Shown: positions 16,714 to 54,420 of the stretch, piece by piece
How the letters are laid out: each line of letters starts with the position of its first letter
Numbering within the stretch: position 1 is the stretch's first letter
Assembly: GCF_031769215.1 (NCBI RefSeq)
Contig: NW_026782015.1
Coordinates: 1,550,001 to 1,614,000 of the forward strand
Source: Ylistrum balloti
Lineage: Eukaryota
Direction: 5' to 3'
DNA: 64,000 nt
Notes under the pieces: generated by a model
The model's database searches: none
What the model saw: the letters and a program-made list of their open reading frames with translations, nothing else
Told to the model about the DNA's origin: nothing
Position numbers and translations under genes: made by a program

Positions 16714-17370
16714 CAGTGTCGGTATGTTTACAGGTATGGAACACGTAGACAGACACTTTACATCAGTGTCGGTATGTTTACAGGTATGGAACACGTAGAC
16801 AGACACTTTACATCAATGTCTGTATGTTTACAGGTATGGAACACGTAGACAGACACTTTACATCAATGTCTGTATGTTTACAGGTATGGAACACGTAGAC
16901 AGACACTTTACATCAATGTCTGTATGTTTACAGGTATGGAACACGTAGACAGACACTTTACATCAATGTCTGTATGTTTACAGGTATGGAACACGTAGAC
17001 AGACACTTTACATCAATGTCTGTATGTTTACAGGTATGGAACACGTAGACAGACACTTTACATCAATGTCTGTATGTTTACAGGTATGGAACACGTAGAC
17101 AGACACTTTACATCAATGTCTGTATGTTTACAGGTTTGGAGCAGGTAGACAGACACTTTACATCAATGTCTATATGTTTACAGGTTTGGAGCAGGTAGAC
17201 AGACACTTTACATCAATGTCTGTATGTTTACAGGTTTGGAGCAGGTAGACAGACACTTTACATCAATGTCTATGTTTACAGGTTTGGAGCAGATAGACAG
17301 ACACTTTACATCAATGTCTGTATGTTTACAGGTTTGGAGCAGGTAGACGACCACTATACATCAATGTGAT
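16714..17370 (+). repeat. 50-bp array containing the HS2ST1 3' splice site, 13 copies
   Basis: Unit TGTCTGTATGTTTACAG|GT(A/T)TGGA..GTAGACAGACACTTTACATCAA; the last copy is the real exon start. Confidence 0.95.
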
Positions 17371-17470
17371 TCGTAATCCTCTCCACAGACTTGTGTCCTA
17401 TTATTACTTCGTACGACATGGCGATGATTTTCGGCCTTATTTAAAGAGAAGAAAAGCAGGAAATAATGAA
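17332..17470 (+). CDS. HS2ST1: HS2ST1 exon with 3'-PB motif
   Basis: TGTTTACAG| and GAA|GTAAGT; 139 nt, phase 2-0; (R)FGAGRRPLYINVIRNPLHRLVSYYYFVRHGDDFRPYLKRRKAGNNE. Confidence 0.93.
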
Positions 17471-17519
17471 GTAAGTTGTTTTTTATTACATTTATGTAGG
17501 AATACAGCTGTTTAAGAAT

Positions 17520-17905
17520 AAATACCAATCACAGCTATTGTTCCTTTAATATTCAACACAATAGACCAATCACAGCTATTGTACCTTTCATATTCAACAC
17601 AATAGACCAATCACAGCTATTGTACCTTTCATATTCAACACAATAGACCAATCACAGCTATTGTACCTTTCATATTCAACACAATAGACCAATCACAGCT
17701 ATTGTTCCTTTCATATTCAACACAATAGACCAATCACAGCTATTGTACCTTTCATATTCAACACAATGGACCAATCACAGGCATTGTTCCTTTCACATTC
17801 AACACAATAGACCAATCACAGGCATTGTTACTTTCACAATCAACACAATAGACCAATCACAGATATGGTACCTTTAATATTCAACACAATAGACCAATCA
17901 CAGTT
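17520..17905. repeat. 41-bp minisatellite, about 9 copies
   Basis: Unit CAATAGACCAATCACAGCTATTGTACCTTTCATATTCAACA. Confidence 0.93.
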
Positions 17906-18309
17906 TTTGTACCTAATATCATTGTGTGTGGGCTGTGACCTGGTGACAGTATAGTGGGCTATTGTAATTTTATGAGCCTACTGAAACAGCTTCCCATATT
18001 TCCACATTAGAACTATAGAGTTAAAGAAATGAGAGTGCTGAGTGAGGCTGTCACTGGAATCACTGACAGTTAACTGGCCAAATTGAGATAGACATGTCTG
18101 TTCCTAAAGTGAGACTGATACTAATTGTGATTTAGTTTATGTTAGGGCCCTTAACCCCAGCTGTAATAATTACACTCAGTTTAAGTTGCCATGTGAGGAT
18201 TATTGATTGAGACAGAGAGAAAGATATATTTTGTAAGGTGAGTGTAAGGCTCCATTCTGTAATTGATTGGGATCAGTATTGGCTCACAAAGAAATTTAAC
18301 AAATTTTAA

Positions 18310-20205
18310 ACAAATGATATCCCCAGTCACCACTTTACTGTCCAACAACTGATATCCCCAGTCACCAATTTACTGTCCAACAAATGATATCCCCAGTCAC
18401 CACTTTACTGTCCAACAAATGATGTCCCCAGTCACCACTTTACTGTCCAACAAATGATATCCCCAGTCACCACTTTACTGTCCAACAAATGATATCCCCA
18501 GTCACCACTTTACTGTCCAACAAATGATATCCCCAGTCACCACTTTACTGTCCAACAAATGATATCCCCAGTCACCAGTTTACTGTCCAACAAATGATAT
18601 CCCCAGTCACCACTTTACTGTCCAACAAATGATATCCCCAGTCACCACTTTACTGTCCAACAAATGATATCTCATACCACCACTTTACTGTCCAACAAAT
18701 GATATCCCCAGTCAACACTTTACTGTCCAACAAATGATGTCCCCAGTCACCACTTTACTGTCCAACAAATGATATCTCCAGTCACCACTTTACTGTCCAA
18801 CAAATGATATCTCATACCACCACTTTACTGTCCAACAAATGATATCCCCAGTCACCACTTAACTGTCCAACAAATGATATCCCCAGTCACCACTTTACTG
18901 TCCAACAAATGATATCCCCAGTCACCAGTTTACTGTCCAACAAATGATATCTCCAGTCACCACTTTACTGTCCAACAAATGATATCTCATACCACCACTT
19001 TACTGTCCAACAAATGATGTCCCCAGTCACCACTTTACTGTCCAACAAATGATATCCCCAGTCATCACTTTACTGTCCAACAAATGATATCCCCAGTCAC
19101 CAGTTTACTGTCCAACAAATGATGTCCCCAGTCACCACTTTACTGTCCAACAAATGATATCCCCAGTCACCAGTTTACTGTCCAACAAATGATGTCCCCA
19201 GTCACCACTTTACTGTCCAACAAATGATATCCCCAGTCACCACTTTACTGTCCAACAAATGATATCCCCAGTCACCAGTTTACTGTCCAACAAATGATGT
19301 CCCCAGTCACCACTTTACTGTCCAACAAATGATATCCCCAGTCACCAGTTTACTGTCCAACAAATGATATCCCCAGTCACCAGTTTACTGTCCAACAAAT
19401 GATATCCCCAGTCACCACTTTACTGTCCAACAAATGATATCCCCAGTCACCAGTTTACTGTCCAACAAATGATATCCCCAGTCACCAGTTTACTGTCCAA
19501 CAAATGATATCCCCAGTCACCACTTTACTGTCCAACAAATGATATCCCCAGTCACCACTTTACTGTCCAACAAATGATATCCCCAGTCACCAGTTTACTG
19601 TCCAACAAATGATATCCCCAGTCACCACTTTACTGTCCAACAAATGATATCTCATACCACCACTTTACTGTCCAACAAATGATATCCCCAGTCACCACTT
19701 TACTGTCCAACAAATGATATCTCATACCACTACTTTACTGTCCAACAAATGATATCCCATACCACCACTTTACTGTCCAACAAATGATATCCCCAGTCAC
19801 CACTTTACTGTCCAACAAATGATATCCCCAGTCACCACTTTACTGTCCAACAAATGATATCCCCAGTCACCACTTTACTGTCCAACAAATGATATCTCAT
19901 ACCACCACTTTACTGTCCAACAAATGATATCCCCAGTCACCACTTTACTGTCCAACAGATGATATCTCATACCACCACTTTACTGTCCAACAAATGATAT
20001 CCCCAGTCACCACTTTACTGTCCAACAAATGATATCCCCAGTCACCACTTTACTGTCCAACAAATGATATCCCCAGTCACCACTTTACTGTCCAACAAAT
20101 GATATCCCCAGTCACCACTTTACTGTCCAACAAATGATATCTCCAGTCACCACTTTACTGTCCAACAAATGATATCTCCAGTCACCAATTTACTGTCCAA
20201 CAGCC
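18310..20205. repeat. 35-bp minisatellite, about 54 copies
   Basis: Unit CAAATGATATCCCCAGTCACCACTTTACTGTCCAA. Confidence 0.95.
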
Positions 20206-20249
20206 AACAAGTACATCTCAACACACATGACTAACAAACTAATCAAACA

Positions 20250-20640
20250 GACAGAACTTGTCCACACTTGACTGAATTCCTAACTAACCAATCATGACAG
20301 AATATCTCTCCACACTTGACTGAATTCCTAACTAACCAGTCATTACAGAATATCTCTCCACACTTGACTGAATTCCTAACTAACCAATCATGACAGAACA
20401 TTTCTCCACACTTGACTGAATTCCTAACTAACCAGTCATTACAGAATATCTCTCCACACTTGACTGAATTCCTAACTAACCAATCATGACAGAACATTTC
20501 TCCACACTTGACTGAATTCCTAACTAACCAGTCATTACAGAATATCTGTCCACACTTGACTGAATTCCTAACCCATCATGACAGCACATCTGTGAAGACT
20601 TGTCTGAACTCCTAACAAACCAGTTTTACCAGAACACCTG
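20250..20640. repeat. 48-bp minisatellite, about 7 copies, alternating A/B variants
   Basis: Unit TCCACACTTGACTGAATTCCTAACTAACCA(ATCATG/GTCATT)ACAGAA... Confidence 0.9.
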
Positions 20641-20949
20641 TCTACACCTGATGTCCTTAGCTCATAGGACATTAGTGAGACAGAAATGTCTATATATCCA
20701 TTCTGCTATATGTAGACTGTATCAAACTGTTCAATAGACCAATGGGAACACAGCTGTGCAATAACACAACTTACCAGACTAATAAAGATATTGTTTATTC
20801 TTGTCAAAATAGTTATCCTTGTTTATATTGTGTCTAGACAACATATTTATGACAGTGGTTTGTTTCAGATTAATAGATTTCTGAGAAATGCTTGAACTGC
20901 TGCTTCATAATCACTCTTTAAAAAGGCTATATAATCGTAACGATAAGAT

Positions 20950-22160
20950 GTACTAGATATATTACAAACAGGGAACAAAATTATTACAGAAAGGTTGTAC
21001 TAAATATATCACAAACAGAGTGTACTAAATATATTACAAACAGGGAACAAAATTATTACAGAAAGGTTGTACTAAATATATCACAAACAGAGTGTACTAA
21101 ATATATTACAAACAGGGTACAAAATTATTACAGAAAGGTTGTACTAAATATAACAAAATATATTACAGTACAAAATTATTACAGAAAGGTTGTACTAAAT
21201 ATATCACAAACAGAGTGTACTAGATATATTACAAACAGGGAACAAAATTATTACAGAAAGGTTGTACTAAATATATCACAAACAGAGTGTACTAAATATA
21301 TTACAAACAGGGAACAAAATTATTACAGAAAGGTTGTACTAAATATATCACAAACAGAGTGTACTAAATATATTACAAACAGGGAACAAAATTATTACAG
21401 AAAGGTTGTACTAAATATATCACAAACAGAGTGTACTAAATATATTACAAACAGGGAACAAAATTATTACAGAAAGGTTGTACTAAATATATCACAAACA
21501 GAGTGTACTAAATATATTACAAACAGGGAACAAAATTATTACAGGAAGGTTGTACTAAATATATCACAAACAGAGTGTACTAAATATATTACAAACAGGG
21601 AACAAAATTATTACAGAAAGTTTGTACTAAATATATCACAAACAGAGTGTACTAAATATATTACAAACAGGGAACAAAATTATTACAGAAAGGTTGTACT
21701 AAATATATCACAAACAGAGTGTACTAAATATATTACAAACAGGGTACAAAATTATTACAGAAAGGTTGTACTAAATATATCACAAACAGAGTGTACTAAA
21801 TATATTACAAACAGGGTACAAAATTATTACAGAAAGTTTGTACTAAATATATCACAAACAGAGTGTACTAAATATATTACAAACAGGGTACAAAATTATT
21901 ACAGAAAGGTTGTACTAAATATATCACAAACAGAGTGTACTAAATATATTACAAACAGGGTACAAAATTATTACAGAAAGGTTGTACTAAATATATCACA
22001 AACAGAGTGTACTAAATATATTACAAACAGGGTACAAAATTATTACAGAATATACTAAATATATCACAAACAGAGTGTACTAAATATATCACAAACAGGG
22101 TACAAAATTATTACAGAATATACTAAATATATCATAAATTGAGTGTACTAATTATATTAC
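20950..22160. repeat. 72-bp minisatellite, about 16 copies
   Basis: Unit GTGTACTAAATATATTACAAACAGGGAACAAAATTATTACAGAAAGGTTGTACTAAATATATCACAAACAGA. Confidence 0.93.
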
Positions 22161-22914
22161 TGATAGGGTATATATGCTTGGTAAATAAAAAATTGGGTAT
22201 ACTTGATATATGACAAATACGATATCTAAATTCATTACATATAAAGTGTTATTTATATATTACAAATAGGGTATATTGAATTTATTACAAATAGTGTGCA
22301 CTTAATGTATACTAAGTAGTGTATGGACTGGATTATTTAGCTATATCAACTTTTTAGCTATGGAATATATATAGGAAAGCAGTGTAGTGCTGTTGTAAGG
22401 TCTCCATTTAAATGTCTTATTACCTGGGTTATGACCCTTTATCTGTTCCATATAAAGAGTGCAATTATCCAGAGTTACAGCCCTTTATCAGTGTTATGTA
22501 ATTCTAGGAAATCAGAACTTCAGAAACAGCACTTTAAAATTTTACAGTTTGTGCTGCAGTAATGTGTGCCGATTTTATTACAGTATTGAGCCATGATATT
22601 TCATTGTAACTATGAGTACATTGATGGTGTGATACCAACCAAGACTTTTATCAATAACATATTTCCTGACGTTCATACTGAGTGGCTGTGTTATCGAGGA
22701 TGACACTCTAATAGACCTGGGGTCCAACATTTCTCAGGCTAATTGTATCAGGATAAGGTTTGGGTTTTAAGGCCTGAAAATCAATGACATTTTGTTAAGG
22801 CAAGTAGGCATGTTTGTATTGAGATTGATATGGTGGAAGAAATACTGAAACTCTACCTACTGCTAACATACATGTATCTGAACAGAACTTCAGATTTTCA
22901 TGTTTTCCTTTGTC

Positions 22915-23530
22915 TTCCATTGTTGTATTGAATTGTTGTGTTGTCTATTGTTATGTTGAGTTGTTGTGTTCATTGTTGTATTTTGTGTTGTCCATTGTTG
23001 TGTTGTTCATTGGTTTTTTTTATTATGGTGTTGTCCACTGATGTGTTGTTGCATTGGTCATTGTTTTCTTGACTTGTTGTTTAGTTCCTTGTGTTGTCCA
23101 TTGTTTAGTTTATTGTGTTGTCTATTGTTTAGTTCATTGTGTTGTCCATTGTTTAAATCATTGTGTTGTCCATTGTTTAGTTCCTTGTGTTGTCCATTGT
23201 TTAGTTCATTGTGTTGTCCATTGTTTAGTTCCTTGTGTTGTCTATTGTTTAGTTCATTGTGTTGTCCATTGTTTAAATTGTTGTGTTGTCCATTGTTTAG
23301 TTCATTGTGTTGTCCATTGTTTAGTTCATTGTGTTGTCCATTGTTTAGTTCATTGTGTTGTCTATTGTTTAGTTCATTATGTTGTCCATTGTTGTGTTGT
23401 CAATTGTTTTATTGAATTTTTGTGTTGTCCATTGTTGTGTTGTTCATTGTTGTGTTGTCCATTGTTGTGTTGTCCATTGTTGTGTTGTCAATTGTTGTGT
23501 TGTATTGTTGTGTTGCCCATTGTAGTATTT
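22915..23530. repeat. TG-rich 15/24-bp low-complexity repeat
   Basis: TTGTGTTGTCCATTG with or without TTTAGTTCA. Confidence 0.88.
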
Positions 23531-24189
23531 ATCGTTATAATGCCCATCGTTTTGTTTGAGTACCACATTCAGGACCTGCAACTTTTTTTAAAACAAACTT
23601 ATCACCTTTTGTTAATTGTTTTTTTCTGGAACATAACTTTGCTTTCATTTAAGCCAGGATATTGAAAACTTGGCTTAGATTGGTCATATTAGGATGACAT
23701 GAAGGACACGCAACCCCTTAATTATTGCCCTTTGTTAAAATTTGGTGTCCAGTAAAGTTGTTTTCAGGGAGCATTCATTAATTTCTCTGATACTCTGGTG
23801 TGGACTGGTTGTGTTGTCCATTGTTGTATTTGGTTGCCATGGCATCCATTGTTATACAAAATGTTGTGTTTTCCATTGTTGTGTTAAGTGGTGCAGTAAA
23901 AGGCCCCTTGTATGTATAAAAAGACAGAGCAGGAGAAATCTGGGAACTTGCCAGACAGGGATGGAATATTTTAGAGAAATAAAGTGAGATAAATATCTGT
24001 GATTATCATTAATTGTTGATTCACCCAGTTTGTAGACAAGACCATCATCCTGGCTCATCAATTATTCTGTCCTGCACGACGTTGTATGTTCACATTAGTT
24101 GTGTCTGCTCTCCAGTATTTCTGTCTGTAGTTCAAGTACTTATTGACGGGCAGGTGATCTCATGTAATGAAGAGGCATCCTTTGTACGT

Positions 24190-25200
24190 CCATCTGTCTG
24201 TAGTCTTGTACTTACTGATGAATAAGTGACCTGATGTCCTGATAGGGTGTCCTATATCCCCATGTCCATCTGTCTGTAGTCTTGTACTTACTGATGAATA
24301 AGAGACCTGATGTCCTGATAGGGTGTCCTATATCCCTATGTCCATCTGTCTGTAGTCTTATACTTACTGATGAATAAGAGACCTGATGTCCTGATAGGGT
24401 GTCCTATATCCCCATGTCCATCTGTCTGTAGTCTTGTACTTACTGATGAATAAGAGACCTGATGTCCTGATAGGGTGTCCTATATCCCTATGTCCATCTG
24501 TCTGTAGTCTTATACTTACTGATGAATAAGAGACCTGATGTCCTGATAGGGTGTCCTATATCCCTATGTCCATCTGTCTGTAGTCTTATACTTACTGATG
24601 AATAAGTGACCTGATGTCCTGTTAGGGTGTCCTATATCCCTATGTCCATCTGTCTGTAGTCTTATACTTACTGATGAATAAGTGACCTGATGTCCTGATA
24701 GGGTGTCCTATATCCCTATGTCCATCTGTCTGTAGTCTTGTACTTACTGATGAATAAGAGACCTGATGTCCTGTTAGGGTGTCCTATATCCCTATGTCCA
24801 TCTGTCTGTAGTCTTATACTTACTGATGAATAAGTGACCTGATGTCCTGATAGGGTGTCCTATATCCCTATGTCCATCTGTCTGTAGTCTTATACTTACT
24901 GATGAATAAGTGACCTGATGTCCTGATAGGGTGTCCTATATCCCTATGTCCATCTGTCTGTTGTCTTATACTTACTGATGAATAAGTGACCTGATGTCCT
25001 GATAGGGTGTCCTATATCCCTATGTCCATCTGTCTGTAGTCTAATACTGATTGAAGGTTAAGTGATGCTATGTCATGATTAGGTGTCCTGTGTCCATGTG
25101 TCCATCTGTCTGTAGTCTTACAATGATTGAATGGTAAGTGATGTTCTGTCATGATGAAATGTCTTGTGTCCATATGTCCATCTGTCTGTAGTTTAGTACT
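24190..25200. repeat. 76-bp minisatellite, about 11 copies plus degenerate edges
   Basis: Unit ATGTCCATCTGTCTGTAGTCTT(G/A)TACTTACTGATGAATAAG(A/T)GACCTGATGTCCTGATAGGGTGTCCTATATCCC(T/C). Confidence 0.93.
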
Positions 25201-25782
25201 GACTGACAAGATGTTGTGTCATGATGTCTAGCATCCTAACCTCCATCTGTCTGACAACAATTATTTCCTTTCAACATCTTTTTTAAAAGCCAAATTAATT
25301 CATATTACAGGGAAAGTAACTTGTTCAAATCAGTGGTATCAAAAGTTTTAAAACTTCTGAATGACCCCAAATAACCATGGAGCCCATGGGTCATTCTGTT
25401 TAGCTAGGGGTATGCTGGGATGAGAGTCAAGCAGTTATTAAGATGAACTAAGAACATGACCAATAGACTACAGGTGTCAAACATTTTAAAGATCTGTAAT
25501 AAAGTGGTAGTCAATGGGAATTTTCATAAACACTTTCACTTTCTTCATTTCACAACTTAAAGAAAAGGTGAGTGATACAGGCCTGTTGGGAGGCTGTCCT
25601 ATCAAAACTTTATTTTCATATTGTTTTAGGACTCTCAGTCTCTTGGTAAAGTCCAAATAGGAATATGAAGACTTGAAGTTGTGCAGAAATGTTGTTGCTG
25701 TTGTTAGGATGATGTACTTGCCGGTATCTACACTGTCAAAATTCTGTGGGATCAGATTCCTTATCTAGTTACTTACATTGTT

Positions 25783-27195
25783 ACAATTCAGTGATGTCAA
25801 GGTCCACATCCAGCTACTCACACCATCACAATTAAGTGATGTCAAGGTCCATGTCTAGCTATTCACAACATCACAATTCTGTGATGTCAGGGTCCACATC
25901 CGGCTATTCACACCATCACAATTTAGTGATGTCAGGGTCCACATCTAGCTATTCACTCCATCACAATTCTGTGATGTCAGGGTCCACATCTAGCTATTCA
26001 CACCATCACAATTTAGTGATGTCAGGGTCCATGTCTAGCTTTTTGCACCATCACAATTCTGTGATGTCAGGGTCCACATCTAGCTATTCACACCATCACA
26101 ATTCTGTGATGTCAGGGTCCACATCTAGCTATTCACACCATCACAATTCTGTGATGTCAGGGTCCACATCTAGCCATTCACACCATCACAATTCTGTGAT
26201 GTCAGGGTCCATGTCTAGCTATTCACACCATCACAATTTAGTGATGTCAGGGTCCATGTCTAGCTATTTGCACCATCACAATTCTGTGATGTCAGGGTCC
26301 ATGTCTAGCTATTTACACCATCACAATTCTGTGATGTCAGGGTCCACATCTAGCCATTCACACCATCACAATTCTGTGATGTCAGGGTCCACATCCAGCT
26401 ATTTACACCATCACAATTCTGTGATGTCAGGGTCCACATCCAGCTATTTACACCATCACAATTCTGTGATGTCAGGGTCCACATCCAGCTATTCACACCA
26501 TCACAATTCTGTGATGTCAGGGTCCACATCTAGATATTCACACCATCACAATTCTGTGATGTCAGGGTCCATGTCTAGCTATTTGCACCATCACAATTCT
26601 GTGATGTCAGGGTCCACATCCAGCTATTCACACCATCACAATTCTGTGATGTCAAGGTCCACATCCAGCTATTTACACCATCACAATTCTGTGATGTCAG
26701 GGTCCACATCCAGCTATTCACACCATCACAATTCTGTGATGTCAGGGTCCACATCCAGCTATTTACACCATCACAATTCTGTGATGTCAGGGTCCACATC
26801 CAGCTATTCACACCATCACAATTCTGTGTTGTCAAGGTCCACATCCAGCTATTCACACCATCACAATTTAGTGATGTCAAGGTCCATGTCTAGCTATTTG
26901 CACCATCACAATTCTGTGATGTCAGGGTCCGTGTCTAGCTATTTGCACCATCACAATTCTGTGATGTCAGGGTCCGTGTCTAGCTATTTGCACCATCACA
27001 ATTCTGTGATGTCAGGGTCCACATCTAGCTATTCACACCATCACAATTCTGTGATGTCAGGGTCCACATCTAGCTATTCACACCATCATAATTCTGTGAT
27101 GTCGGGGTCCACGTCTAGCTTTCACACCATCACAATTCTGTGATGTCGGGGTCCACATCTAGCTATTCACACCATCACAATTCTGTGGTGACAGG
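25783..27195. repeat. 45-bp minisatellite, about 31 copies, ending about 30 nt before an HS2ST1 acceptor
   Basis: Unit CACCATCACAATTCTGTGATGTCAGGGTCCACATCTAGCTATTCA; source of the 435-aa His/Ser ORF. Confidence 0.95.
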
Positions 27196-44904: not shown

Positions 44905-45600
44905 ACCCAGGTCATTTATGTCTCTGACTTTTACATAAACATGTACACCAAGGTCATTTATGTCTCTGACTTTTACATAAACATGTACACCAAGGTCATT
45001 TATGTCTCTGACTTTTACATAAACATGTACAAACATGTCTCTGACTTTTACATAAACATGTACACCAAGGTCATTTATGTCTCTGACCTTTACATAAACA
45101 TGTACACCAAGGTCATTTATGTCTCTGACTTTTACATAAACATGTACATAAAGGTCGTTTATGTCTCTGACTTTTACATAAACATGTACACCAAGGTCAT
45201 TTATGTCTCTGACCTTTACATAAACATGTACACCAAGGTCATTTATGTCTCTGACCTTTACATAAACATGTACACCAAGGTCATTTATGTCTCTGACCTT
45301 TACATAAACATGTACACCAAGGTCATTTATGTCTCTGACTTTTACATAACATGTACACCAAGGTCATTTATGTCTCTGACTTTTACATAACATGTACACC
45401 AAGGTCATTTATGTCTCTGACTTTTACATAAACATGTACACCAAGGTCATTTATGTCTCTGACTTTTACATAAACATGTACACCAAGGTCATTTATGTCT
45501 CTGACTTTTACATAAACATGTACACCAAGGTCATTTATGTCTCTGACTTTTACATAAACATGTACACCAAGGTCATCTATGTTTCTGACTTTTATAATGT
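44905..45600. repeat. 42-bp minisatellite, about 16 copies, filling almost the whole intron
   Basis: Unit CCAAGGTCATTTATGTCTCTGACTTTTACATAAACATGTACA. Confidence 0.95.
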
Positions 45601-45614
45601 GAGTGTTAACATAC

Positions 45615-45772
45615 TTGATACACTTATCAAAGGCTGTTTTTCCCTCTTTCTCTACCCTGAAGTAGCCCTCTAGACAATTCTCACAACGCCGTCCTTCAGT
45701 GTTGTACATACAGTTGACACACATTGCCTCATCTTCTTTTGGGCCACGTGATCCAAAGCTATTGTCTTTACT
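45615..45772 (-). CDS. MEGF8: MEGF8 exon (laminin-EGF)
   Basis: AACTTCAG| and AA|GTATGT; 158 nt, phase 0-2; SKDNSFGSRGPKEDEAMCVNCMYNTEGRRCENCLEGYF. Confidence 0.9.
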
Positions 45773-45954
45773 CTGAAGTTCAAATTAAACAAACAATGTT
45801 CATATCTGTATGGGAATATATTCCAATTTGAAAACTTCACAATGAAGTAAACTTCTCGAAATGAAATGACTTACAGTAAGGTATGTTATTCTGGCAAGAG
45901 GTCAAACTCACATTCAAGGTCTAGGGGAATTACGTACATACCAGAATCATTGGG

Positions 45955-47240
45955 AAACTTACATCACAGAAGTATGGGGAATAATTACATCCCAGAAGTA
46001 TGGGGAATAATTACATCACAGAAGTATGGGGAATATTTACATCCCAGAAGTATGTGGAAATACTTACATCACAGAAGTATGGGGAATACTTACATCACAG
46101 AAGTATGGGGAATAATTACATCCCAGAAGTATGGGGAATACTTATATCACAGAAGTATGGGGAAGACTTACATCACAGAAGTATGGGGAATATTTATATC
46201 ACAGAAGTATGGGGAAACTTACATCACAGAAGTATGGGGAATACTTATATCACAGAAGTATGGGGAATACTTATATCACAGAAGTCTGGGGAATAATTAC
46301 ATCACAGAAGTATGGGGAATATTTACATCAAAGAAGTATAGGGAATACTTATATCACAGAAGTATGGGGAATACTTACATCACAGAAGTATGGGGAATAC
46401 TTACATCAAAGAAGTATGGGGAATAATTACATCCCAGAAGTATGGGGAATAATTACATCACAGAAGTATGGGGAATAATTACATCCCAGAAGTATGGGGA
46501 ATACTTATATCACAGAAGTATGGGGAATACTTATATCACAGAAGTATGGGGAATAATTACATCCCAGAAGTATGGGGAATAATTACATCACAGAAGTATG
46601 GAGAATAATTACATCACAGAAGTATGGGGAAGACTTACATCCCAGAAGTATGGGGAATAATTACATCCCAGAAGTATGGGGAATACTTATATCACAGAAG
46701 TATGGGGAATACTTATATCACAGAAGTATGGGGAATAATTACATCCCAGAAGTATGGGGAATAATTACATCACAGAAGTATGGGGAAGACTTACATCACA
46801 GAAGTATGGGGAATAATTACATCACAGAAGTATGGGGAAGACTTACATCCCAGAAGTATGGGGAATAATTACATCCCAGAAGTATGGGGAATACTTATAT
46901 CACAGAAGTATGGGGAATACTTATATCACAGAAGTATGGGGAATACTTATATCACAGAAGTATGGGGAAGACTTACATCACAGAAGTATGGGGAATATTT
47001 ATATCACAGAAGTATGGGGAATAATTACATCCCAGAAGTATGGGGAATATTTATATCACAGAAGTATGTGGAAATACTTACATCACAGAAGTATGGGGAA
47101 TACTTATATCACAGAAGTATCGGGAATAATTACATCACAGAAGTACGGGGAATACTTACATCCCAGAAGTATGGGGAATATTTACATCCCAGAAGTATGG
47201 GGAATACTTAATCCTAGAATTTGAGGGAATACTTACATCC
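45955..47240 (-). repeat. 26-bp array containing a MEGF8 5' splice site, about 49 copies
   Basis: Minus-strand unit GAT|GTAAGTATTCCCCATACTTCT(G/GG) versus real donor GGGAT|GTAAGTATTCCC. Confidence 0.93.
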
Positions 47241-47383
47241 CAAAAAATTGAATGGTTGTTCATGCCGTCTCGAAATGTACAATTTGGTGTGTGGTTGTGG
47301 CAGTGTTCCAGACAAGGCACACAGGGTTTCTTGTCCTGAGGTGATCCTACATATAACTTCTGACAGTGTTCACAGTGTGGACC
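47237..47383 (-). CDS. MEGF8: MEGF8 exon (laminin-EGF)
   Basis: ATGTTTCAG| and GAT|GTAAGT; 147 nt, phase 0-0; GPHCEHCQKLYVGSPQDKKPCVPCLEHCHNH...IFWD. Confidence 0.9.
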
Positions 47384-47830
47384 CTGAAACATAAAACTCT
47401 CCATACAACAAATCTTACTTTTTTGCAATTTATGAGGAAAATATGACACTAAGCAGAATGTGACATTAACAAATGAAATTATCATTACATTAAAATCATT
47501 TTTACAAAGTTTCAATTCAGTAGGGTATCTATTCATAGAAAAGTGTAAGACACAGACTGATGGACTGACTGACAAACAGACAAGGGAGGTAATAATAGTC
47601 TCCTCCAGATGGACTGGAAGGGAACTAGTAAAAAAGGCCTCACTCCTGAGAGTACAGCTACTTGGGTTCTGATCAGGTACATAAGTTCAGCATGACAAAA
47701 TCCCAGCAAGTCGTACAGCTAGTTGGGGCCTAATCAATGTGACATACTTAATCATGAAAGAAATTATGATGTGAATCCAGTTAAACTATGAAAAGAGAAA
47801 GGTAAACTCTAACACTATACGAAGGCTCAC

Positions 47831-48020
47831 CTGTGTATTGTTGATGCAGTCAAGACAATTTTCTTTCTCCATAGCACTGAGACACTTGCTGTAACCGTTA
47901 CACTTACACTTGGTGCTGCAGTCATTGCCTACCCAGCCAAAGTCACATGTACAATGATCAGGTGCATCACACACCCCATGTACACAGCCTTGATGGCATA
48001 CAGGCTCACAGATGTCCTTA
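47831..48020 (-). CDS. MEGF8: MEGF8 exon (EGF / laminin-EGF)
   Basis: TACTTACAG| and CAG|GTGAGC; 190 nt, phase 2-0; KDICEPVCHQGCVHGVCDAPDHCTCDFGWVGNDCSTKCKCNG...NNTQ. Confidence 0.93.
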
Positions 48021-48345
48021 CTGTAAGTAATAATTATATATGTACACAGATCTCCTTACTGTAAATAATAATTATATATGTACACAGATCTCCTTACTGT
48101 AAATAATTATTATATATGTACACAGATCTCCTTACTGTAAATAATAATTATATATTTACACAGGTCTCCTTACTGTAAATAATTATTATATATGTACACA
48201 GATCTCCTTACTGTAAATAATAATTATATATTTACACAGATCTCCTTACTGTAAATAATTATTATATATGTACACAAATGTCCTTTCTGTTTAGTATAAT
48301 TATCCATGTACATAGATTTCCGAACTGTAAATTATAATTTTTAAC
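48006..48345 (-). repeat. 38-bp array containing a MEGF8 3' splice site, 9 copies
   Basis: Acceptor AG (CT on +) at 48021, 48059, 48097, 48135, 48173, 48211, 48249, 48287, 48325. Confidence 0.93.
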
Positions 48346-48369
48346 GTGTCCACACTGATCTCTTTAATA

Positions 48370-48690
48370 TACAAAAACACAGTAAATCAGAGATTACACC
48401 CAGTATACATATAATATCAGACACACATAAACAATGGACACAATTCTATAAATACTGGACACAGTGAGTCAGAGATTACACCCAGTATACACATAATATC
48501 AGACACACATAAACAATGGACACAATTCTATAAATACTGGACACAGTGAGTCAGAGATTACACCCAGTATACACATAATATCAGACACACATAAACAATG
48601 GACACAATTCTATAAATACTGGACACAGTGAGTCAGAGATTACACCCAGTATACACATAATATCAGACACACATAAACAATGGACACAAT
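48370..48690. repeat. 82-bp tandem repeat, about 4 copies
   Basis: GGACACAGTGAGTCAGAGATTACACCCAGTATAC...; period 48421 to 48503. Confidence 0.9.
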
Positions 48691-48769
48691 CCTATTAATT
48701 ACGGAGTTTTACACAGTAGAAATGAAACATATGCCTTTAAAACCATATATAGAATTAGATGGTACATAC

Positions 48770-48950
48770 CGTTCTTTCCACAGATAACCCTTCTTACATT
48801 CACACATGAAGCCTTCAGGTTTGTCTATACAACGCTGCCTCTCCCTGTTACAGCTGTGATGGTTATTCAAACACTCATTCTCAGTGACGCATTTGGTGAA
48901 CACCCACTGTGGGGGACCCATCGATAGGCGTAGATAGGGATTTTCCTGTG
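48770..48950 (-). CDS. MEGF8: MEGF8 exon (calcium-binding EGF-like)
   Basis: TTACTTCTAG| and CG|GTATGT; 181 nt, phase 1-2; ...ENECLNNHHSCNRERQRCIDKPEGFMCECKKGY. Confidence 0.9.
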
Positions 48951-49387
48951 CTAGAAGTAACACACCTAACAGAATGTTAATAACAGGAGTCAGATCTTTA
49001 ACATCCGCTTTCCGGTACCCATAAATAGGTAAAGAAAGGGTTTGTCCTCTACACAAAACTATATAAAAAAACTAAAAAAACACAGCTGCCTTAATCCTCA
49101 ATAACTTTCAACTTTCTTTACTCTAATCCACTCTAATAAACTCAAAGGTAAAGTGTTAACAAGATAAAATAATGGTTAATGTTCTAAAAGTTTTAAAGGA
49201 TTTGGCTGAGCTATTAAGTTTGATACAATAAATCACAGAAGGGAGGTAGCTCCTACGAAAAACATCAAAATACCAAATACATTGTATTATTGGTAACGTA
49301 CAGCAGTTACTTTCAGAGAATATGATTAAAGCTTATGCTGAGAAAGCACAAAAGCATTCAGTCATTCTCAAGGAAATACCTCCAATG

Positions 49388-49757
49388 AACAAGAGGCCCA
49401 TAGGGCCTTAACGGCCATTTGACTTTAATGAGATTTATGTGAAAGTGGCTAAATATGCCTAAACAAGACCACTTTGTCGGTTCATAGAAACATTTTCTGC
49501 AAACCTGAAATCCTATTTGCAACTACATAAATATGGCTCTGGACCAATTGATTTGAAACCTCAACTCATTTGACCCCTGTGACCTTGAAAGTGGGGTAAA
49601 GGTCATTTATTTCAACACACTTGGTAGCCATTCATCTCATCATGCTACAGAACCACTATCAGCACCCTAGGCCATTTGGGTACCGAGAAGAAGTTATTTG
49701 AATGGAAACATGATAGCTATAGGTCATCCTGACCCTTTTGGTCAAATGACCTAAAAA
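49388..49757. mobile_element. Dispersed hairpin-ended repeat, Helentron/HINE-like
   Basis: Starts AACAAGAGGCCCATAGGGCCTT, ends with hairpin AGGTCATCCTGACC-CTTTT-GGTCAAATGACCT then AAAAA. Confidence 0.45.
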
Positions 49758-49894
49758 TAACTTACAGCATATCTTGAGTACTGATCCCATTATTAGTGCC
49801 CATCAGAATTGTTTGAGACAATTACCAGCTCCAAACTTTCATAAACAGTTGAAAAAAAAGCATTTTACCCCTCTTTCCAGCAAAGAAACCTTAC

Positions 49895-50189
49895 CTGGCT
49901 CTTCTCCTTCACCTGGCACTTCTCCTTCACCTTGCACCTCTCCTTCATCTGGCTCCACCACATGTTCATCACATCGACCCCCTATGGGGCTATTCACACC
50001 TCCCTTCATACAAACTCCCAAGCCATTGAGTCCTAAGAAAGCACACCAGCCACAGCCTGGAGCCTGAAGGCACTCTGAGCACCAGCCATACTCCTTACAT
50101 GGGCGTGGACATTTGCTTCTTGCTGCTTGGATAATGAGGCCGCATTCTCCACCAGCACAGTGGAGATGGTGGTAGGCAGGTGGCATGCA
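49895..50189 (-). CDS. MEGF8: MEGF8 exon (PSI)
   Basis: TAATTGCAG| and CAG|GTAAGG; 295 nt, phase 0-1; CMPPAYHHLHCAGGECG...CSECLQAPGCGWCAF. Confidence 0.92.
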
Positions 50190-50313
50190 CTGCAATTAAC
50201 AAGTAACAGTTCCTATAGATAAACATTATTTACCCCAGTTTATCAATAAAACTTAAGTTATATCCTAAACTTGGCAATAATGGATCGAAAGAATGTGATT
50301 GGTGGGCACTGAA

Positions 50314-50315
<2 letters not shown>

Positions 50316-50365
<50 letters not shown>

Positions 50366-50368
50366 GAG
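50316..50368. repeat. (GA)n microsatellite
   Basis: Near-perfect GA run. Confidence 0.95.
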
Positions 50369-50467
50369 AAACAAAGTTATACTATTGTAGAATATGACTG
50401 GCCAGTAATGAAGAGGTAGAGAAGCAAAGTAATAATCCTGTGGTGACATTACTTAAAAATCACAAAC

Positions 50468-50679
50468 CTCCTGTAACATCTCACTCCAGATACATTCCTT
50501 AGAACCTCCTTCACTTCCCGTTGACTTGAGACAGGAGGTACAGGTACGATAGGTGTGACATCGGGCTGGACAGATATCCTGGGACTGTGAGCGCTCGAGA
50601 GGTCCTTCTGTCACCGTCCTCAACAGGAAACATCCCCACTCAAATGGCTGATTTCCTGTTAGGATCAGGGTCTTTTCAG
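50468..50679 (-). CDS. MEGF8: MEGF8 exon (PSI)
   Basis: GAATTTCAG| and GAG|GTTTGT; 212 nt, phase 1-0; ...FEWGCF...CPARCHTYRTCTSCLKSTGSEGGSKECIWSEMLQE. Confidence 0.9.
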
Positions 50680-50832
50680 CTGAAATTCAAGTAGTTTGTA
50701 TTAAAATAAAACTGTGGCATTTCATGGAACAAAATATTACCTTAAAGTAGCAGTTTGTGTTTAACTTAGCATACCTAATGGTTGACTTGCAGTATAAATT
50801 TTGCATTAAATGGCTGACTTATTTAAACTCAC

Positions 50833-51037
50833 CTTTTCGTTTGATGTTATTGGCCCAAAGACAGCTATTAGCATGGCACTTATCACAGTCTGAGGCTGTA
50901 CAGGAGAACTCTTCACACTGCCCTGCCTCCAGCTTCACTTGGTTCAGAGTGTTTGCGTCACACTCATTTTCTAGCTTACATTCACCATCAAAAGGGATGC
51001 ACTTACCCTTGGGACAGTTGGTGCACCATTTACACGC
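50833..51037 (-). CDS. MEGF8: MEGF8 exon (PSI)
   Basis: GTATTTTAG| and AAG|GTGAGT; 205 nt, phase 0-1; ACKWCTNCPKGKCIPFDGEC...CTASDCDKCHANSCLW. Confidence 0.92.
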
Positions 51038-51483
51038 CTAAAATACAAAGCAGTGCATCATTTTTGTTTCATATAACATGAAAACATTTGCAAGATATCA
51101 ACTTAATATTGGTATATGGGCAATGCGATTCTTTGTCCCCTCATCAACACTTATCAAGATGAAAACCTTTGTCCCCTCATCAGCTCTCATCAATGTATTG
51201 TATACAAAATGAAAACTTTTGTCCCCTCATCAGCTTTCATCAATACACTTTATACAAAATGAAAACTTTTGTCCCCTCACCAGCTCTTATCAATATATTG
51301 TATAAAAGATGAAAACCTTTCCCGCCTCGTCAGCACTCATCACTGTGTTATTAAAAAAGATGCAATATTTTGTCCCCTCATCACCAATGTTAAATATACT
51401 GTATACAAGAGGTAAATCTTTAACCTGACATCAGCACTTATCAATATATTGTGTATGAGATTAGGCAGAAAGGGTGAAGTTAC

Positions 51484-51622
51484 CTTGGAATAATTCTGTT
51501 TGAAGTGAGGAAAGGTAGCAAGGCAATGGGAGCAGTCTTTGTATTGGTAACAGGAACGCTCAAGGTGCCACTGTAGACTACACTGCTCTCCAGTAATTAC
51601 TGTCACATGGGGTGCCTCACAG
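51484..51622 (-). CDS. MEGF8: MEGF8 exon (PSI)
   Basis: CTATTATAG| and AAG|GTAACT; 139 nt, phase 2-0; CEAPHVTVITGEQC...CYQYKDCSHCLATFPHFKQNYSK. Confidence 0.87.
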
Positions 51623-51704
51623 CTATAATAGACATATACACTGGATTTTTTAAACAGTGTGGCCATTGTATAAAATGAACATGCCATCATAAACAAAGTA
51701 GAAA

Positions 51705-52210
51705 TGTTAATCAATCAAATTATTATAGATTACATACACTAAAATGTGAATCAATCAAATTATTATAGATTGCATACACTAAAATGTGAATCAATCAAAT
51801 TATTATAGATTGCATACACTAAAATGTGAATCAATCAAATTTGTGAATCAATCAAATTATTATAGATTGCATACACTAAAATGTGAATCAATCAAATTAT
51901 TATAGATTGCATACTCTAAACTGTGAATCAATCAAATTATTATAGATTGCATACACTAAAATGTGAATCAATCAAATTATTATAGATTGCATACACTAAA
52001 ATGTGAATCAATCAAATTTGTGAATCAATCAAATTATTATAGATTGCATACACTAAAATGTGAATCAATCAAATTATTATAGATTGCATACACTAAAATG
52101 TGAATCAATCAAATTATTATAGATTGCATACTCTAAACTGTGAATCAATCAAATTATTATAGATTGCATACACTAAAATGTGAATCGATTAAATTATCAT
52201 AGATTGCATT
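51705..52210. repeat. 40-bp minisatellite, about 12 copies
   Basis: Unit AATCAATCAAATTATTATAGATTGCATACACTAAAATGTG. Confidence 0.93.
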
Positions 52211-52469
52211 AATTTGATACCTTATTACTGTAACCAAGACAAAGAAAACTGACAAGAAAACAAATACAGAGTTAGTATAAGGCCTGTACCTTTTCAAGTA
52301 TCTTTACCTTGTGATACTAACAAAGCATCCTTAAATAGACAGGTCCAGGCTGATATTTTGCATCATCTCATTCTCATTAACACACTGAATGAGATTTTGT
52401 TACAGTATGTCAGCCGGTGATCAAGGTAAAAATGCATATTTCATTAATCTGTTTGCATACTTTACGTAC

Positions 52470-52731
52470 AATGCAGGCTCTGGCCGACTGTTGGAGTAAC
52501 AGTACGTCCTGTTCTGGGCCCCAGGAGTGGACATGATACAGGCAGAACAGCCTGAGGAGTTGACACAGCGGTTGAGGTCTCCAATCAGGCTACACACATC
52601 ACTGGGCAGGTCAAGCTTGATAATCTCACTGTGAACAAAGTGGTCCAGACCTCCCATCACATATATACTATTGTTTACCACAGCAGAGCTTGGTGCCAAC
52701 ACAGAGTGTAGAGGTCGACTGAAGGACACAT
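52470..52731 (-). CDS. MEGF8: MEGF8 exon (kelch to PSI)
   Basis: TTTATTGCAG| acceptor; donor TT|GTACGT (a same-phase GTATGC 9 nt further is also possible); phase 1-2; ...SIYVMGGLDHFVHSEIIKLDLPSDVCSLIGDLNRC. Confidence 0.85.
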
Positions 52732-53148
52732 CTGCAATAAATATGTACTAGTTTAACATACTACTCGACCCATTAACGACTACAAAAGTGAAGCCTATTG
52801 TAAAATTTCAATATTTTGTTTTTGTATCTATATCATATTTACTGGGTGTAATTTCACAAACAATATGAGGGAAAATCCCAGTCAGATACAAGCAACATAC
52901 AAGCTAAGATCAGAGCTGTAATGTACACGCATATTCTATAAATGTACAAGGACATTTAAACAGTCTATTTATGTTATTATCACTTGACTTGACTGATGAT
53001 AATGGATTGTATGGAAATATCTAAAACATTCATATGATATAAAATTTAGATGCATTTGCAAACTTCGATTAAATAAATGCCTTGGAGTAATATCAATCCT
53101 ACAGTAGATCACAGTTACAATGGTAAATTCAACATCTTCTATACACAC

Positions 53149-53293
53149 CTCCTAAATCAAATTTGTGCCAATAGTTACAGAGGTATCGATAGATGAGGAT
53201 GCTGTTAGAGAAGTTGGAGTTGTCTGTTCGTCCTCCCATCACTACCATGTAGTCTCCCATGTCTACTGCTGTGTGAAGAAAGCGGGCATCCTT
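53149..53293 (-). CDS. MEGF8: MEGF8 exon (kelch)
   Basis: TATTTTGTAG| and GAG|GTGTGT; 145 nt, phase 0-1; KDARFLHTAVDMGDYMVVMGGRTDNSNFSNSILIYRYLCNYW. Confidence 0.9.
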
Positions 53294-53357
53294 CTACAAA
53301 ATAAACACATCTATCATGACATAAATTATAATTCAATCAAATATAGACCAGAGGAAA

Positions 53358-54420
53358 GACTTACCTGACTAACTCTCCTAAGCTTATAGGACCTGCCTTA
53401 CCTGACTAACTCTCCTAAGCTTATAGGACTTGCCTTACCTGACTAACTCTCCTTAGCTTATAGGACTTGCCTTACCTGACTAACTCTCCTAAGCTTATAG
53501 GACTTGCCTTACCTGACCAACTCTCCTTAGCTTATAGGACCTGCCTTACCTGACTAACTCTCCTAAGCTTATAGGACCTGCCTTACCTGACTAACTCTCC
53601 TAAGCTTATAGGACCTGCCTTACCTGACTAACTCTCCTTAGCTTATAGGACTTGCCTTACCTGACTAACTCTCCTAAGCTTATAGGACTTGCCTTACCTG
53701 ACTAACTCTCCTAAGCTTATAGGACCTGCCTTACCTGACTAACTCTCCTTAGCTTATAGGACTTGCCTCACCTGACTAACTCTCCTAAGCTTATAGGACT
53801 TGCCTTACCTGACTAACTCTCCTTAGCTTATAGGACTTGCCTCACCTGACTAACTCTCCTTAGCTTATAGGACTTGCCTCACCTGACTAACTCTCCTTAG
53901 CTTATAGGACTTGCCTCACCTGACTAACTCTCCTTAGCTTATAGGACCTGCCTTACCTGACCAACTCTCCTTAGCTTACAGGACTTGCCTTACCTAACTA
54001 CACTCCTCAGCCTGTAGGACCTGCCTTACCTGACTACCCTCCTCAGTCTATAGGACTTGAGTACAGACTTGCTGTAACTACCCTCTACTGCTATAGGATT
54101 TGAATAAGACTTACCTAACTACCCTCTGCTGTCTGTAGGATTTGAGTACAGACTTACTGTAACTACCCTCTACTGCTATAGGATTTGAATAAGACTTACC
54201 TAACTACCCTCTGCTGTCTGTAGGATTTGAGTACAGACTTACCTAACTACCCTCTGCTGTCTGTAGGATTTGAGTACAGACTTACTGTAACTACCCTCTA
54301 CTGCTACAGGATTTGAATAAGACTTACCTAACTACCCTCTGCTGTCTGTAGGATTTGAGTACAGACTTACTGTAACTACCCTCTGCTGTCTGTAGGATTT
54401 AAATACGACTTACCTGACTA
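53358..54420 (-). repeat. Compound 37-bp plus 42/43-bp arrays, both containing a MEGF8 5' splice site
   Basis: Plus-strand units CTTAC-CTGACTAACTCTCCTAAGCTTATAGGAC and GACTTAC-CTAACTACCCTC versus exon end ACTTAC-CTGACTACCCTCCTCAGCCTGGAGGAC. Confidence 0.92.

What the first reader, a model, noticed from the sequence alone, without database searches (positions are those of the whole stretch)
16714..54420. Recurrent splice-junction minisatellites: five arrays built from amplified exon-intron boundaries
Seen: in both genes, five unrelated arrays (50, 31, 26, 38 and 37/43 bp) have a unit that is a copy of a real splice junction with flanking exon bases. Polarity is consistent: acceptor arrays run upstream into the intron with the last copy coding, and donor arrays run downstream with the first copy coding. 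Each real site therefore sits beside 8 to about 45 canonical GT or AG decoys. Established: tandem duplication of AG|GT-containing segments is a proposed intron-gain route, and decoy-site use usually feeds NMD. Inference: either junctions are hot spots for array birth in this lineage, or arrays arise anywhere and survive only when they grow away from the exon. Either way, splicing must discriminate among many near-identical sites, and VNTR length could tune expression.
Basis: partly seen in the sequence, partly recalled or inferred. Interest (0 to 1): 0.82.

Follow-up and report, generated by a model that had tools for sequence, protein, structure and literature searches.

The report
Splice-junction minisatellites ("mirages") in a mollusc
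Five tandem repeats in two neighbouring mollusc genes really are multiplied copies of the genes' own exon-intron boundaries, but this kind of repeat is already known from amphioxus and several human genes, and most of its frequency here follows from very short introns in a repeat-rich genome.

Summary
All five arrays (50, 31, 26, 38 and 37/43 bp) are tandem copies of a real junction of an HS2ST-like gene (+ strand) or MEGF8 (- strand). Each unit carries 13-36 exon bases plus the GT or AG.

The "consistent polarity" carries no information. Duplicating a junction-spanning segment always leaves the extra copies on the intron side.

The window is 54% minisatellite, and MEGF8 introns shrink to about 100-700 bp once arrays are collapsed. 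Random seeding therefore predicts about 3-4 junction arrays in the window against 5 seen, which is not significant. The unselected 5' half of MEGF8 adds 5 more. The total is 10 of 44 intragenic arrays, against 3.4-3.8 expected (uniform null, P about 0.001-0.003) or 5.4-6.1 (null conditioned on the intron, P 0.02-0.05). This is a mild excess, not a proven hot spot.

Every decoy in the five arrays would cause a frameshift or premature stop. The arrays are locus-specific, not transposon-borne.

The kind is known: amphioxus "mirages" and human F7, IFI6, CBS, LMNB2 and PDGF. The host is a mollusc nearest to bivalves. This scan has already noted the same thing on other DNA of this genome, which earlier notes call a scallop. 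Expression tuning is untested.

The parts
16713..17367 (+). 50-bp acceptor-junction array, 13 copies. Unit = 14 nt of intron end (ctgtatgtttacag) + the first 36 nt of HS2ST exon 3. The last copy is the real acceptor (AG at 17330-17331; exon starts at 17332).
   Evidence: TRF; sequence; exon 3 aligns to HS2ST1 chain residues 453-496 from its first codon; 12 homologous decoy acceptors, 11 AG sites in the array score at least as high as the real acceptor; decoy use gives a frameshift or stop; locus-specific.
17332..17470 (+). HS2ST-like exon 3 (139 nt), the real exon behind the 50-bp array.
   Evidence: weak Sulfotransfer_2 hit.
27225..27322 (+). HS2ST-like exon 4 (98 nt). Its donor TTG|GTAGGT lies at 27322/27323.
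   Evidence: gap-free alignment to HS2ST1 chain residues 499-530, with the next exon resuming at residue 532.
27306..28724 (+). 31-bp donor-junction array, about 45 copies. Unit = about 17 last exon-4 bases + 14 intron bases. The first copy is the real donor. 37 decoys have the identical 9-mer TTG|GTAGGT.
   Evidence: TRF (27340-28724); sequence; decoy scores; read-through meets TAG directly after the donor; locus-specific.
45924..47249 (-). 26-bp donor-junction array, about 50 copies, downstream of MEGF8 exon 14 (47237-47383). Unit = about 13 exon + 13 intron nt. Only 13 decoys keep GAT|GTAAGT.
   Evidence: TRF; sequence; junction; decoys; first in-frame stop ends 81 nt after the donor, and 26 is not a multiple of 3; column variability.
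48007..48339 (-). 38-bp acceptor-junction array, 8.8 copies, upstream of MEGF8 exon 13 (47831-48020). Unit = 24 intron + 14 exon nt. The last copy is the real acceptor.
   Evidence: TRF; sequence; junction; EGF Pfam hits on exon 13; every decoy meets a stop at codon 7 of the insert.
53360..54441 (-). Donor-junction array in two families, filling the intron after MEGF8 exon 5 (54414-54583): 43/85-bp units next to the exon and 37-bp units further away. The unit holds about 27 exon nt + the donor. 26 strong decoy donors. The real CAG|GTAAGT is the strongest.
   Evidence: TRF; sequence; junction; decoys; stop ends 15 nt after the donor; locus-specific apart from a weak 70-72% match on contig C604.
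49889..49953 (-). Small 18-bp x3.7 in-frame array across the MEGF8 exon-11 donor. Three same-phase donors lie 18 nt apart (49931, 49913, 49895).
   Evidence: TRF; sequence; candidate donors.
2882..31000 (+). HS2ST-like gene: six coding exons in the window (2882-3055, 7504-7589, 17332-17470, 27225-27322, 28876-29033, 30780-31000). The first acceptor is uncertain.
41456..58670 (-). MEGF8 3' half: 18 exons, about residues 1400-2811 of a unionid MEGF8. The 5' half lies beyond the window end.

Best explanation
These are 'mirage'-type minisatellites. Short segments of 26-50 bp that happened to span an exon-intron boundary were duplicated in tandem. They then expanded by the ordinary minisatellite processes, replication slippage or unequal exchange (the process is inferred). 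The genome makes minisatellites at a very high rate, and the introns of these genes were originally short. Duplicating a junction-spanning segment always leaves one copy joined to the exon: the first copy for a donor, the last for an acceptor. So the gene stays intact and the copies pile up inside the intron. The arrays are most likely tolerated passengers. The splicing machinery is inferred to keep using the exon-adjacent site, as shown experimentally for human F7 intron 7. Any use of a decoy would give a frameshifted or stop-containing RNA that is expected to be degraded by NMD.
For: Units derive from junctions whose exon parts encode conserved residues. Arrays cover 54% of the window, 37% of the next 80 kb and 25% of a random 200 kb of the same contig. 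MEGF8 introns collapse to about 70-2700 bp (median about 280) once arrays are reduced to one unit. With that geometry, random seeding predicts 3-3.8 junction arrays in the window against 5 seen. The junction sits in the middle of the units (exon share about 0.3-0.7), not at a unit edge, as expected for random placement. Array ages differ (86-97% unit identity), so this was not one burst. The arrays are locus-specific. Decoys are mostly intact rather than disabled: 37 of about 44 and 26 of about 28. This fits tolerance through exon-proximal site choice, shown for F7 and reported for other human genes (PMC1557585). Amphioxus mirages do not disturb splicing (PMC3087553, PMC3902484). All decoys in the five arrays are non-productive.
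Against: In the larger sample there are more junction arrays than even the conservative null predicts: 10 against 5.4-6.1, P 0.02-0.05. In random DNA, array units carry donor-like sites somewhat more often than matched controls: 13 against 7.1 +/- 2.5, P 0.03. No RNA data were available, so use of the real sites rests on protein homology alone. Acceptor arrays place the decoys upstream of the real site, where a simple 5'-to-3' scanning rule would favour the decoys.
Confidence: 0.72

Rival explanations
1. Junctions, donors especially, are true hot spots for the birth or expansion of arrays in this lineage. The cause could be a mutational bias linked to transcription or splicing, or a donor-like motif that promotes expansion.
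For: 10 of 44 intragenic arrays span a junction, against 3.4-3.8 expected under uniform seeding (P about 0.001-0.003). The unselected 5' half of MEGF8 alone gives 5 of 15 against 1.2-1.3 expected (P about 0.004-0.007). Donors outnumber acceptors: 7-8 against 3. There is a donor-like site excess in a random 200 kb.
Against: The excess shrinks to 1.6-1.9-fold (P 0.02-0.05) once one conditions on which intron holds the array, and it is absent within the window. At stricter donor thresholds the random sample shows no excess (3 against 2.9). The junction lies mid-unit, not at a duplication end point. The donor:acceptor ratio does not differ significantly from 1:1 and could equally reflect selection against acceptor decoys. 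The sample is only two genes.
Confidence: 0.18
2. The arrays are functional. Donor arrays could recruit U1 snRNP to protect or boost expression of repeat-swollen introns. The distal CAG|GTATGG copies of the 50-bp array could act as recursive splice sites. Array length could tune expression.
For: Decoy donor cores are the least variable part of the 31-bp unit, and GT is intact in all aligned 37-bp copies. Eight distal copies of the 50-bp array read CAG|GTA (sequence).
Against: There is no RNA or population evidence. Low variability can come from recent amplification. In the 26-bp array most decoys have lost +1G or +5G. Most arrays in the same introns contain no splice site at all (34 of 44). 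Known precedents behave as silent passengers (PMC1557585, PMC3087553).
Confidence: 0.07
3. The arrays are assembly artefacts: collapsed or inflated repeats.
For: None specific. Long perfect repeats such as the 42-bp array outside the window are hard to assemble.
Against: Arrays show internal variant and higher-order structure, and graded divergence from the real junction. They are bounded by unique sequence. The same pattern recurs at many independent loci.
Confidence: 0.02

Closest known systems
Amphioxus 'mirage' minisatellites (Adh3, Canestro et al. 2002; globin genes BflGb6/9, PMC3087553; PGBD5 and troponin C, PMC3902484)
   Same: Tandem repeats whose unit spans an exon-intron boundary. 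Both 5' and 3' boundaries are affected. Many copies carry AG or GT. The unit range is similar (Adh3 10-72 bp). Several occur per gene.
   Different: The host here is a mollusc, not a cephalochordate: MEGF8 is 39-46% identical to Branchiostoma against 50-52% to bivalves. Arrays here are longer, up to about 50 copies, and denser: 10-11 in two neighbouring genes. Normal splicing was shown by RT-PCR in amphioxus and is only inferred here.
Human F7 intron 7 37-bp VNTR, and the similar IFI6 (6-16), CBS IVS13, LMNB2 and PDGF minisatellites (PMC1557585)
   Same: The first monomer spans the exon-intron boundary, so the real donor is followed by identical pseudo-donors. The unit size (37 bp) matches one array here.
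   Different: F7 has 5-9 copies with only 4 exon bases. Here there are up to about 45 copies with 13-27 exon bases, and there are acceptor arrays too. The 5'-to-3' choice of the first donor was shown by mutagenesis in F7 and is untested here.
Intron gain by tandem duplication of an AGGT-containing segment (Rogers model; e.g. PMC4974935)
   Same: Tandem duplication creates extra, potentially usable splice sites.
   Different: In that model an exonic segment is duplicated and a new intron is created. Here existing junctions are duplicated and no new intron or exon is evident.
Recursive splice sites (ratchet points)
   Same: Eight distal copies of the 50-bp unit have a 3' splice site directly followed by a donor-like GTATGG.
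   Different: This is a motif resemblance only. It is a by-product of the exon's first bases (GTTTGG) with one substitution. There is no conservation or RNA evidence.

Membership tests
Mirage / junction-spanning minisatellite | Head-to-tail array of a short unit (about 10-160 bp) | tested here: met
   TRF: periods 50, 31, 26, 38 and 37/43 bp; 8.8-50.6 copies; 86-97% matches.
Mirage / junction-spanning minisatellite | The unit contains exon bases plus the splice dinucleotide of a real exon-intron boundary | tested here: met
   13-36 exon-derived bases per unit. The junctions are fixed by gap-free alignment to solved HS2ST1 and by 17 MEGF8 homologues.
Mirage / junction-spanning minisatellite | One terminal copy is the real junction, contiguous with the exon | tested here: met
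   It is the first copy for the three donor arrays and the last copy for the two acceptor arrays.
Mirage / junction-spanning minisatellite | The mature mRNA uses the real site and decoys stay silent | not testable with these tools
   No RNA data are available for this genome. This is inferred only because the real sites reproduce the conserved protein and all decoys give a frameshift or stop.
Mirage / junction-spanning minisatellite | Length polymorphism or instability | not testable with these tools
   Only a single assembly is available.
Recursive splice site | Juxtaposed 3'ss and 5'ss motif, with RNA evidence of stepwise removal | tested here: inconclusive
   The motif CAG|GTATGG is present in 8 distal copies of the 50-bp array. 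There is no RNA evidence.
Heparan sulfate 2-O-sulfotransferase (HS2ST) | Sulfotransfer_2 domain and collinear similarity to a solved HS2ST1 | tested here: met
   PF03567 scores 23.9 bits against a cut-off of 22 on exon 1. Exons 2-5 match 3F5F/4NDZ chain residues 424-583 without gaps, E 4e-7 to 7e-17.
MEGF8 | Collinear similarity to named MEGF8 proteins, with attractin-type beta-propeller and laminin/attractin EGF domains | tested here: met
   The last exon is 52% identical to unionid MEGF8, E 6.5e-82. 33 exons are collinear with P0005 residues 9-2811. PF24981, PF23301 and PF24973 hit single exons, mostly below the whole-protein cut-offs.

The most novel reading that the evidence does not exclude
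Junction-anchored arrays, donor arrays above all, are favoured in this mollusc lineage beyond what short introns explain. The cause could be a splicing- or transcription-linked mutational bias. Alternatively, rows of U1-binding decoy donors at the start of an intron may help expression of introns swollen by minisatellites. Either way, this genome would be a natural library of dozens to hundreds of in-vivo splice-site competition experiments.
Probability: 0.12. Interest if true: 0.7.

Novelty: new member of a known kind. Interest (0 to 1): 0.4.

Why it matters
If the density seen here holds genome-wide, this mollusc offers many natural tests of how a spliceosome picks one site among up to about 40 identical ones. 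That covers both donors and acceptors, a question studied so far mainly in one human intron (F7). It also shows how minisatellite growth can multiply intron length several-fold (here from about 100-300 bp to 1-1.5 kb) without breaking genes. Finally, it gives a concrete null model, collapsed introns with conditioning on the intron, that any claim of a 'junction hot spot' must beat.

Tried and rejected
- **Amphioxus origin:** this was my first guess because of the mirage literature. I rejected it because MEGF8 is 39-46% identical to Branchiostoma against 50-52% to bivalves, and the tree places the window with bivalves and a gastropod.
- **Transposon-borne satellites:** rejected. Three arrays match only themselves in the 648-Mb genome, apart from weak 70-76% hits.
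- **Known RNA families in the window:** none found.
- **More junction arrays:** the 42-bp array at 44905-45594 and a 23-bp array in the 5' half start 13-25 nt inside the intron, so I did not count them.
- **Selection disabling decoys:** not supported in general. The donor core is the least variable part of the 31-bp unit, and GT is intact in all aligned 37-bp copies. Only the 26-bp array shows loss at +1 and +5.
- **Shared arrays in related species:** a search with the exon-5 open frame found nothing. The best relative of the last exon is an unnamed 198-aa fragment at 88% identity. This could not be tested.
- **Species name:** earlier scan notes say Ylistrum balloti. I could only confirm 'mollusc, nearest to bivalves'.
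- **Canestro et al. 2002:** PMC117041 is not held, so I cite it through PMC3087553.
- **Joined sequences:** Exons were searched one by one by reference. Joined exon pairs existed only in memory inside scripts that scored candidate junctions.
Full report
**What is there**

The window is G000:C158:1550001-1614000 of a 648.5-Mb assembly. Tandem Repeats Finder reports 49 separate arrays covering 54% of the 64 kb. Two convergent genes fill most of it.

On the + strand lies a heparan-sulfate 2-O-sulfotransferase-like gene (HS2ST). Its six coding exons are 2882-3055, 7504-7589, 17332-17470, 27225-27322, 28876-29033 and 30780-31000. Exon 1 reaches the Pfam Sulfotransfer_2 cut-off. Exons 2-5 align to the solved chicken HS2ST1 fusion (3F5F/4NDZ) at chain residues 424-451, 453-498, 499-530 and 532-583. 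Residues 452 and 531 are supplied by the two split codons, so there is no gap at any junction.

On the - strand lies the 3' half of MEGF8: 18 exons from 58670 down to the stop before 41456. I mapped them with 17 full-length MEGF8 homologues found through the last exon. Rfam finds nothing in the window.

**The organism**

The MEGF8 last exon is 52% identical to a unionid mussel protein, 50% to Biomphalaria and 46% to Branchiostoma. A 389-residue exon from the 5' half is 50-52% identical to bivalves, 44% to a gastropod and 39% to amphioxus. In a tree it groups with the bivalves and the gastropod, with support 81/90. So this is a mollusc, nearest to bivalves. Earlier notes of this scan call the genome a scallop, Ylistrum balloti. 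I could not test the species name.

- **50-bp array (16713-17367).** The unit is 14 nt of intron end plus the first 36 nt of HS2ST exon 3. The last copy is the real acceptor.
- **31-bp array (homology from about 27306 to 28724).** The unit is about 17 last bases of exon 4 plus 14 intron bases. The first copy is the real donor.
- **26-bp array (47249-45924, - strand).** It copies about 13 exon bases plus GTAAGTATTCCCC after MEGF8 exon 14.
- **38-bp array (48339-48007, - strand).** It copies 24 intron bases plus the first 14 bases of exon 13.
- **37/43-bp arrays (54441-53360, - strand).** They copy about 27 last bases of exon 5 plus the donor.

I built a position weight matrix from the 37 real donors and 37 real acceptors of these two genes. 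Decoys scoring at least as well as the lower quartile of real sites number 38, 14 and 26 for the donor arrays, and 16 and 7 for the acceptor arrays.

No decoy in these five arrays is productive:
- The HS2ST exon-4 read-through meets TAG at once.
- The exon-5 read-through of MEGF8 stops 15 nt after the donor.
- The 26-bp unit shifts the frame, and a stop ends 81 nt after the donor.
- The 38-bp inserts meet a stop at codon 7.
- The 50-bp inserts shift the frame or meet a stop.

It is an 18-bp x3.7 in-frame array across the exon-11 donor, with three same-phase donors 18 nt apart.

Three arrays searched against the whole genome match only themselves, apart from weak hits at 70-76% identity. So they arose locally and are not transposon cargo.

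**Polarity is not evidence**

Suppose a segment e+i is duplicated in tandem, where e is the exon end and i is the intron start. The result reads exon-e-i-e-i-intron. The first donor still gives the normal mRNA, and every further copy lies in the intron by definition. The mirror argument holds for acceptors. It says nothing about a survival filter.

**Is it more than chance?**

I reduced every array to one unit to approximate the gene before expansion. I then asked how often a seed of each array's unit length, placed at random among viable positions, would span a junction with at least 6-10 exon bases. Viable positions are those inside an intron or across a junction.

MEGF8 introns in the window collapse to 98-944 bp. 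The expectation for the window is 0.5 (HS2ST) plus 2.1-2.6 (MEGF8), against 5 observed. When the null is conditioned on the intron that actually holds each array, the expectation is about 3.8 against 5. Neither difference is significant. The five arrays as handed to me need no hot spot.

To get an unselected sample I fetched the next 80 kb and mapped the 5' half of MEGF8, which has 15 more exons. It holds five clear junction arrays:
- donors at 86142 (42 bp), 81815 (64 to about 100 bp), 71944 (64 bp) and 67475 (29 bp);
- one acceptor at 67703 (36 bp);
- one borderline donor array at 69649 (38 bp).

Coordinates here continue the window numbering.

| Sample | Junction arrays seen | Expected, uniform null | Expected, intron-conditioned null |
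|---|---|---|---|
| 5' half of MEGF8 alone | 5 of 15 | 1.2-1.3 (P 0.004-0.007) | 2.0-2.3 (P 0.03-0.05) |
| Both genes together | 10 of 44 | 3.4-3.8 (P 0.0014-0.0034; 2.8-3.2, P 0.0003-0.0009, if only arrays of at least 5 copies count) | 5.4-6.1 (P 0.02-0.05) |

Uniform-null figures are; intron-conditioned figures are.

A random 200 kb of the same contig is 24.7% arrays. Of its 61 arrays, 13 carry a donor-like site against 7.1 +/- 2.5 in length-matched non-array controls (P 0.027). There is no excess at stricter thresholds.

My reading is that roughly half or more of the junction arrays are what short introns plus a very high array birth rate predict. There is a mild residual excess that two genes cannot settle.

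Two further points argue against a break-at-the-junction mechanism. The junction sits in the middle of the units (exon share about 0.3-0.7), not at a duplication end. And arrays of every kind crowd the same introns (34 of 44 contain no junction).

**How it most likely works**

Shown: the units derive from junctions, the arrays are local, they differ in age (86-97% unit identity), and decoy use would be non-productive.

Inferred: the arrays grew by slippage or unequal exchange, and the spliceosome keeps using the exon-adjacent site. The second inference rests on precedent:
- In human F7 intron 7 a 37-bp minisatellite whose first monomer spans the boundary gives 4-8 identical pseudo-donors. These are functional but unused, because the most upstream donor is chosen.
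- IFI6, CBS, LMNB2 and PDGF carry similar arrays with 10-25 pseudo-sites, of which at most the first two are used (PMC1557585).
- In amphioxus the same structures, named 'mirages', occur at both 5' and 3' boundaries of Adh3, globin, troponin C and PGBD5 genes without disturbing splicing (PMC3087553, PMC3902484).

Decoys here are mostly not disabled. The donor core is the least variable part of the 31-bp unit, and GT is intact in all aligned 37-bp copies. This fits tolerance rather than purging. The 26-bp array is the exception, with +1 and +5 among its most variable columns.

Acceptor arrays are the less understood case, because their decoys lie upstream of the real site. Exon definition (real exons of 139 and 190 nt) is my guess for how the real site wins. 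The donor:acceptor ratio of 7-8 to 3 could reflect weaker tolerance of acceptor arrays, but it is not significantly different from 1:1.

**Novelty**

The kind is known. I found the mirage and F7 papers through the literature search before opening the notes of earlier agents on other windows of this genome. Those notes had reached the same label on other DNA.

What is new is the host phylum. My searches turned up no report for molluscs. The density is also unusual: 10-11 junction arrays in two neighbouring genes. Expression tuning, recursive splicing at the CAG|GTATGG copies, and a U1-recruiting role remain untested ideas.

Exons were searched singly by reference. Joined exon pairs existed only in memory inside the scripts that scored candidate junctions.

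Noticed in passing
window 49889-49953 (- strand): An 18-bp x3.7 in-frame repeat (GEGEVP-like codons) straddles the MEGF8 exon-11 donor. It gives three same-phase donors 18 nt apart. Use of different ones would add or drop 6 residues without breaking the frame.
   Followed up: partly
L004:1376-2177 (C158:1635376-1636177), - strand: A 42-bp donor-junction array after MEGF8 exon 2. Its first five copies are 100% identical to the real junction unit. The unit is 14 codons long, so read-through stays open for 222 nt. This is the only junction array seen where decoy use could give in-frame insertions.
   Followed up: partly
window 45924-47239: In the 26-bp donor array the most variable unit columns include +1 (G to A, 31%) and +5 (48%) of the donor. 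Only 13 of about 50 copies keep GAT|GTAAGT. The 31- and 37-bp arrays show the opposite, with conserved donor cores.
   Followed up: partly
window 16713-17130: The eight copies of the 50-bp acceptor array furthest from the exon read CAG|GTATGG, an acceptor directly followed by a donor-like site. The four copies next to the exon and the real site read CAG|GTTTGG.
   Followed up: partly
G000:C604:521876-522412 and G000:C140:75236-75432: There are weak matches (70-76% identity) of the 37-bp and 31-bp junction units to tandem arrays on other contigs. They may be unrelated donor-seeded arrays that share the donor core.
   Followed up: no
window 1-64000; L002-L009; L010-L029: Minisatellite load differs strongly by region. 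It is 54% of the window, 37% of the next 80 kb and 24.7% of twenty random 10-kb samples of the same contig. Most MEGF8 introns consist mainly of one or two arrays.
   Followed up: yes
window 1599-2770 and 24188-25206: Two intronic or upstream arrays carry good donor-like motifs on the strand antisense to HS2ST (CAG|GTTAGT and CA|GTAAGTAT in the TRF consensus). So donor-like cores also occur in arrays that are not derived from a junction of the host gene.
   Followed up: no
L003:9826-10000 and L004:1-993 (C158:1633826-1634993), - strand: The first beta-propeller region of MEGF8 (about residues 117-496) is encoded by a single 1.17-kb exon. The homologous second propeller in the window is split into at least six exons.
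   Followed up: no
window 31000-41456: The 10-kb stretch between the two convergent genes (3' UTRs or intergenic) also holds several arrays, for example 22 bp x58 at 31589-32872, 16/40 bp at 37727-38664 and 50 bp at 40207-41103. No coding similarity was found there.
   Followed up: no
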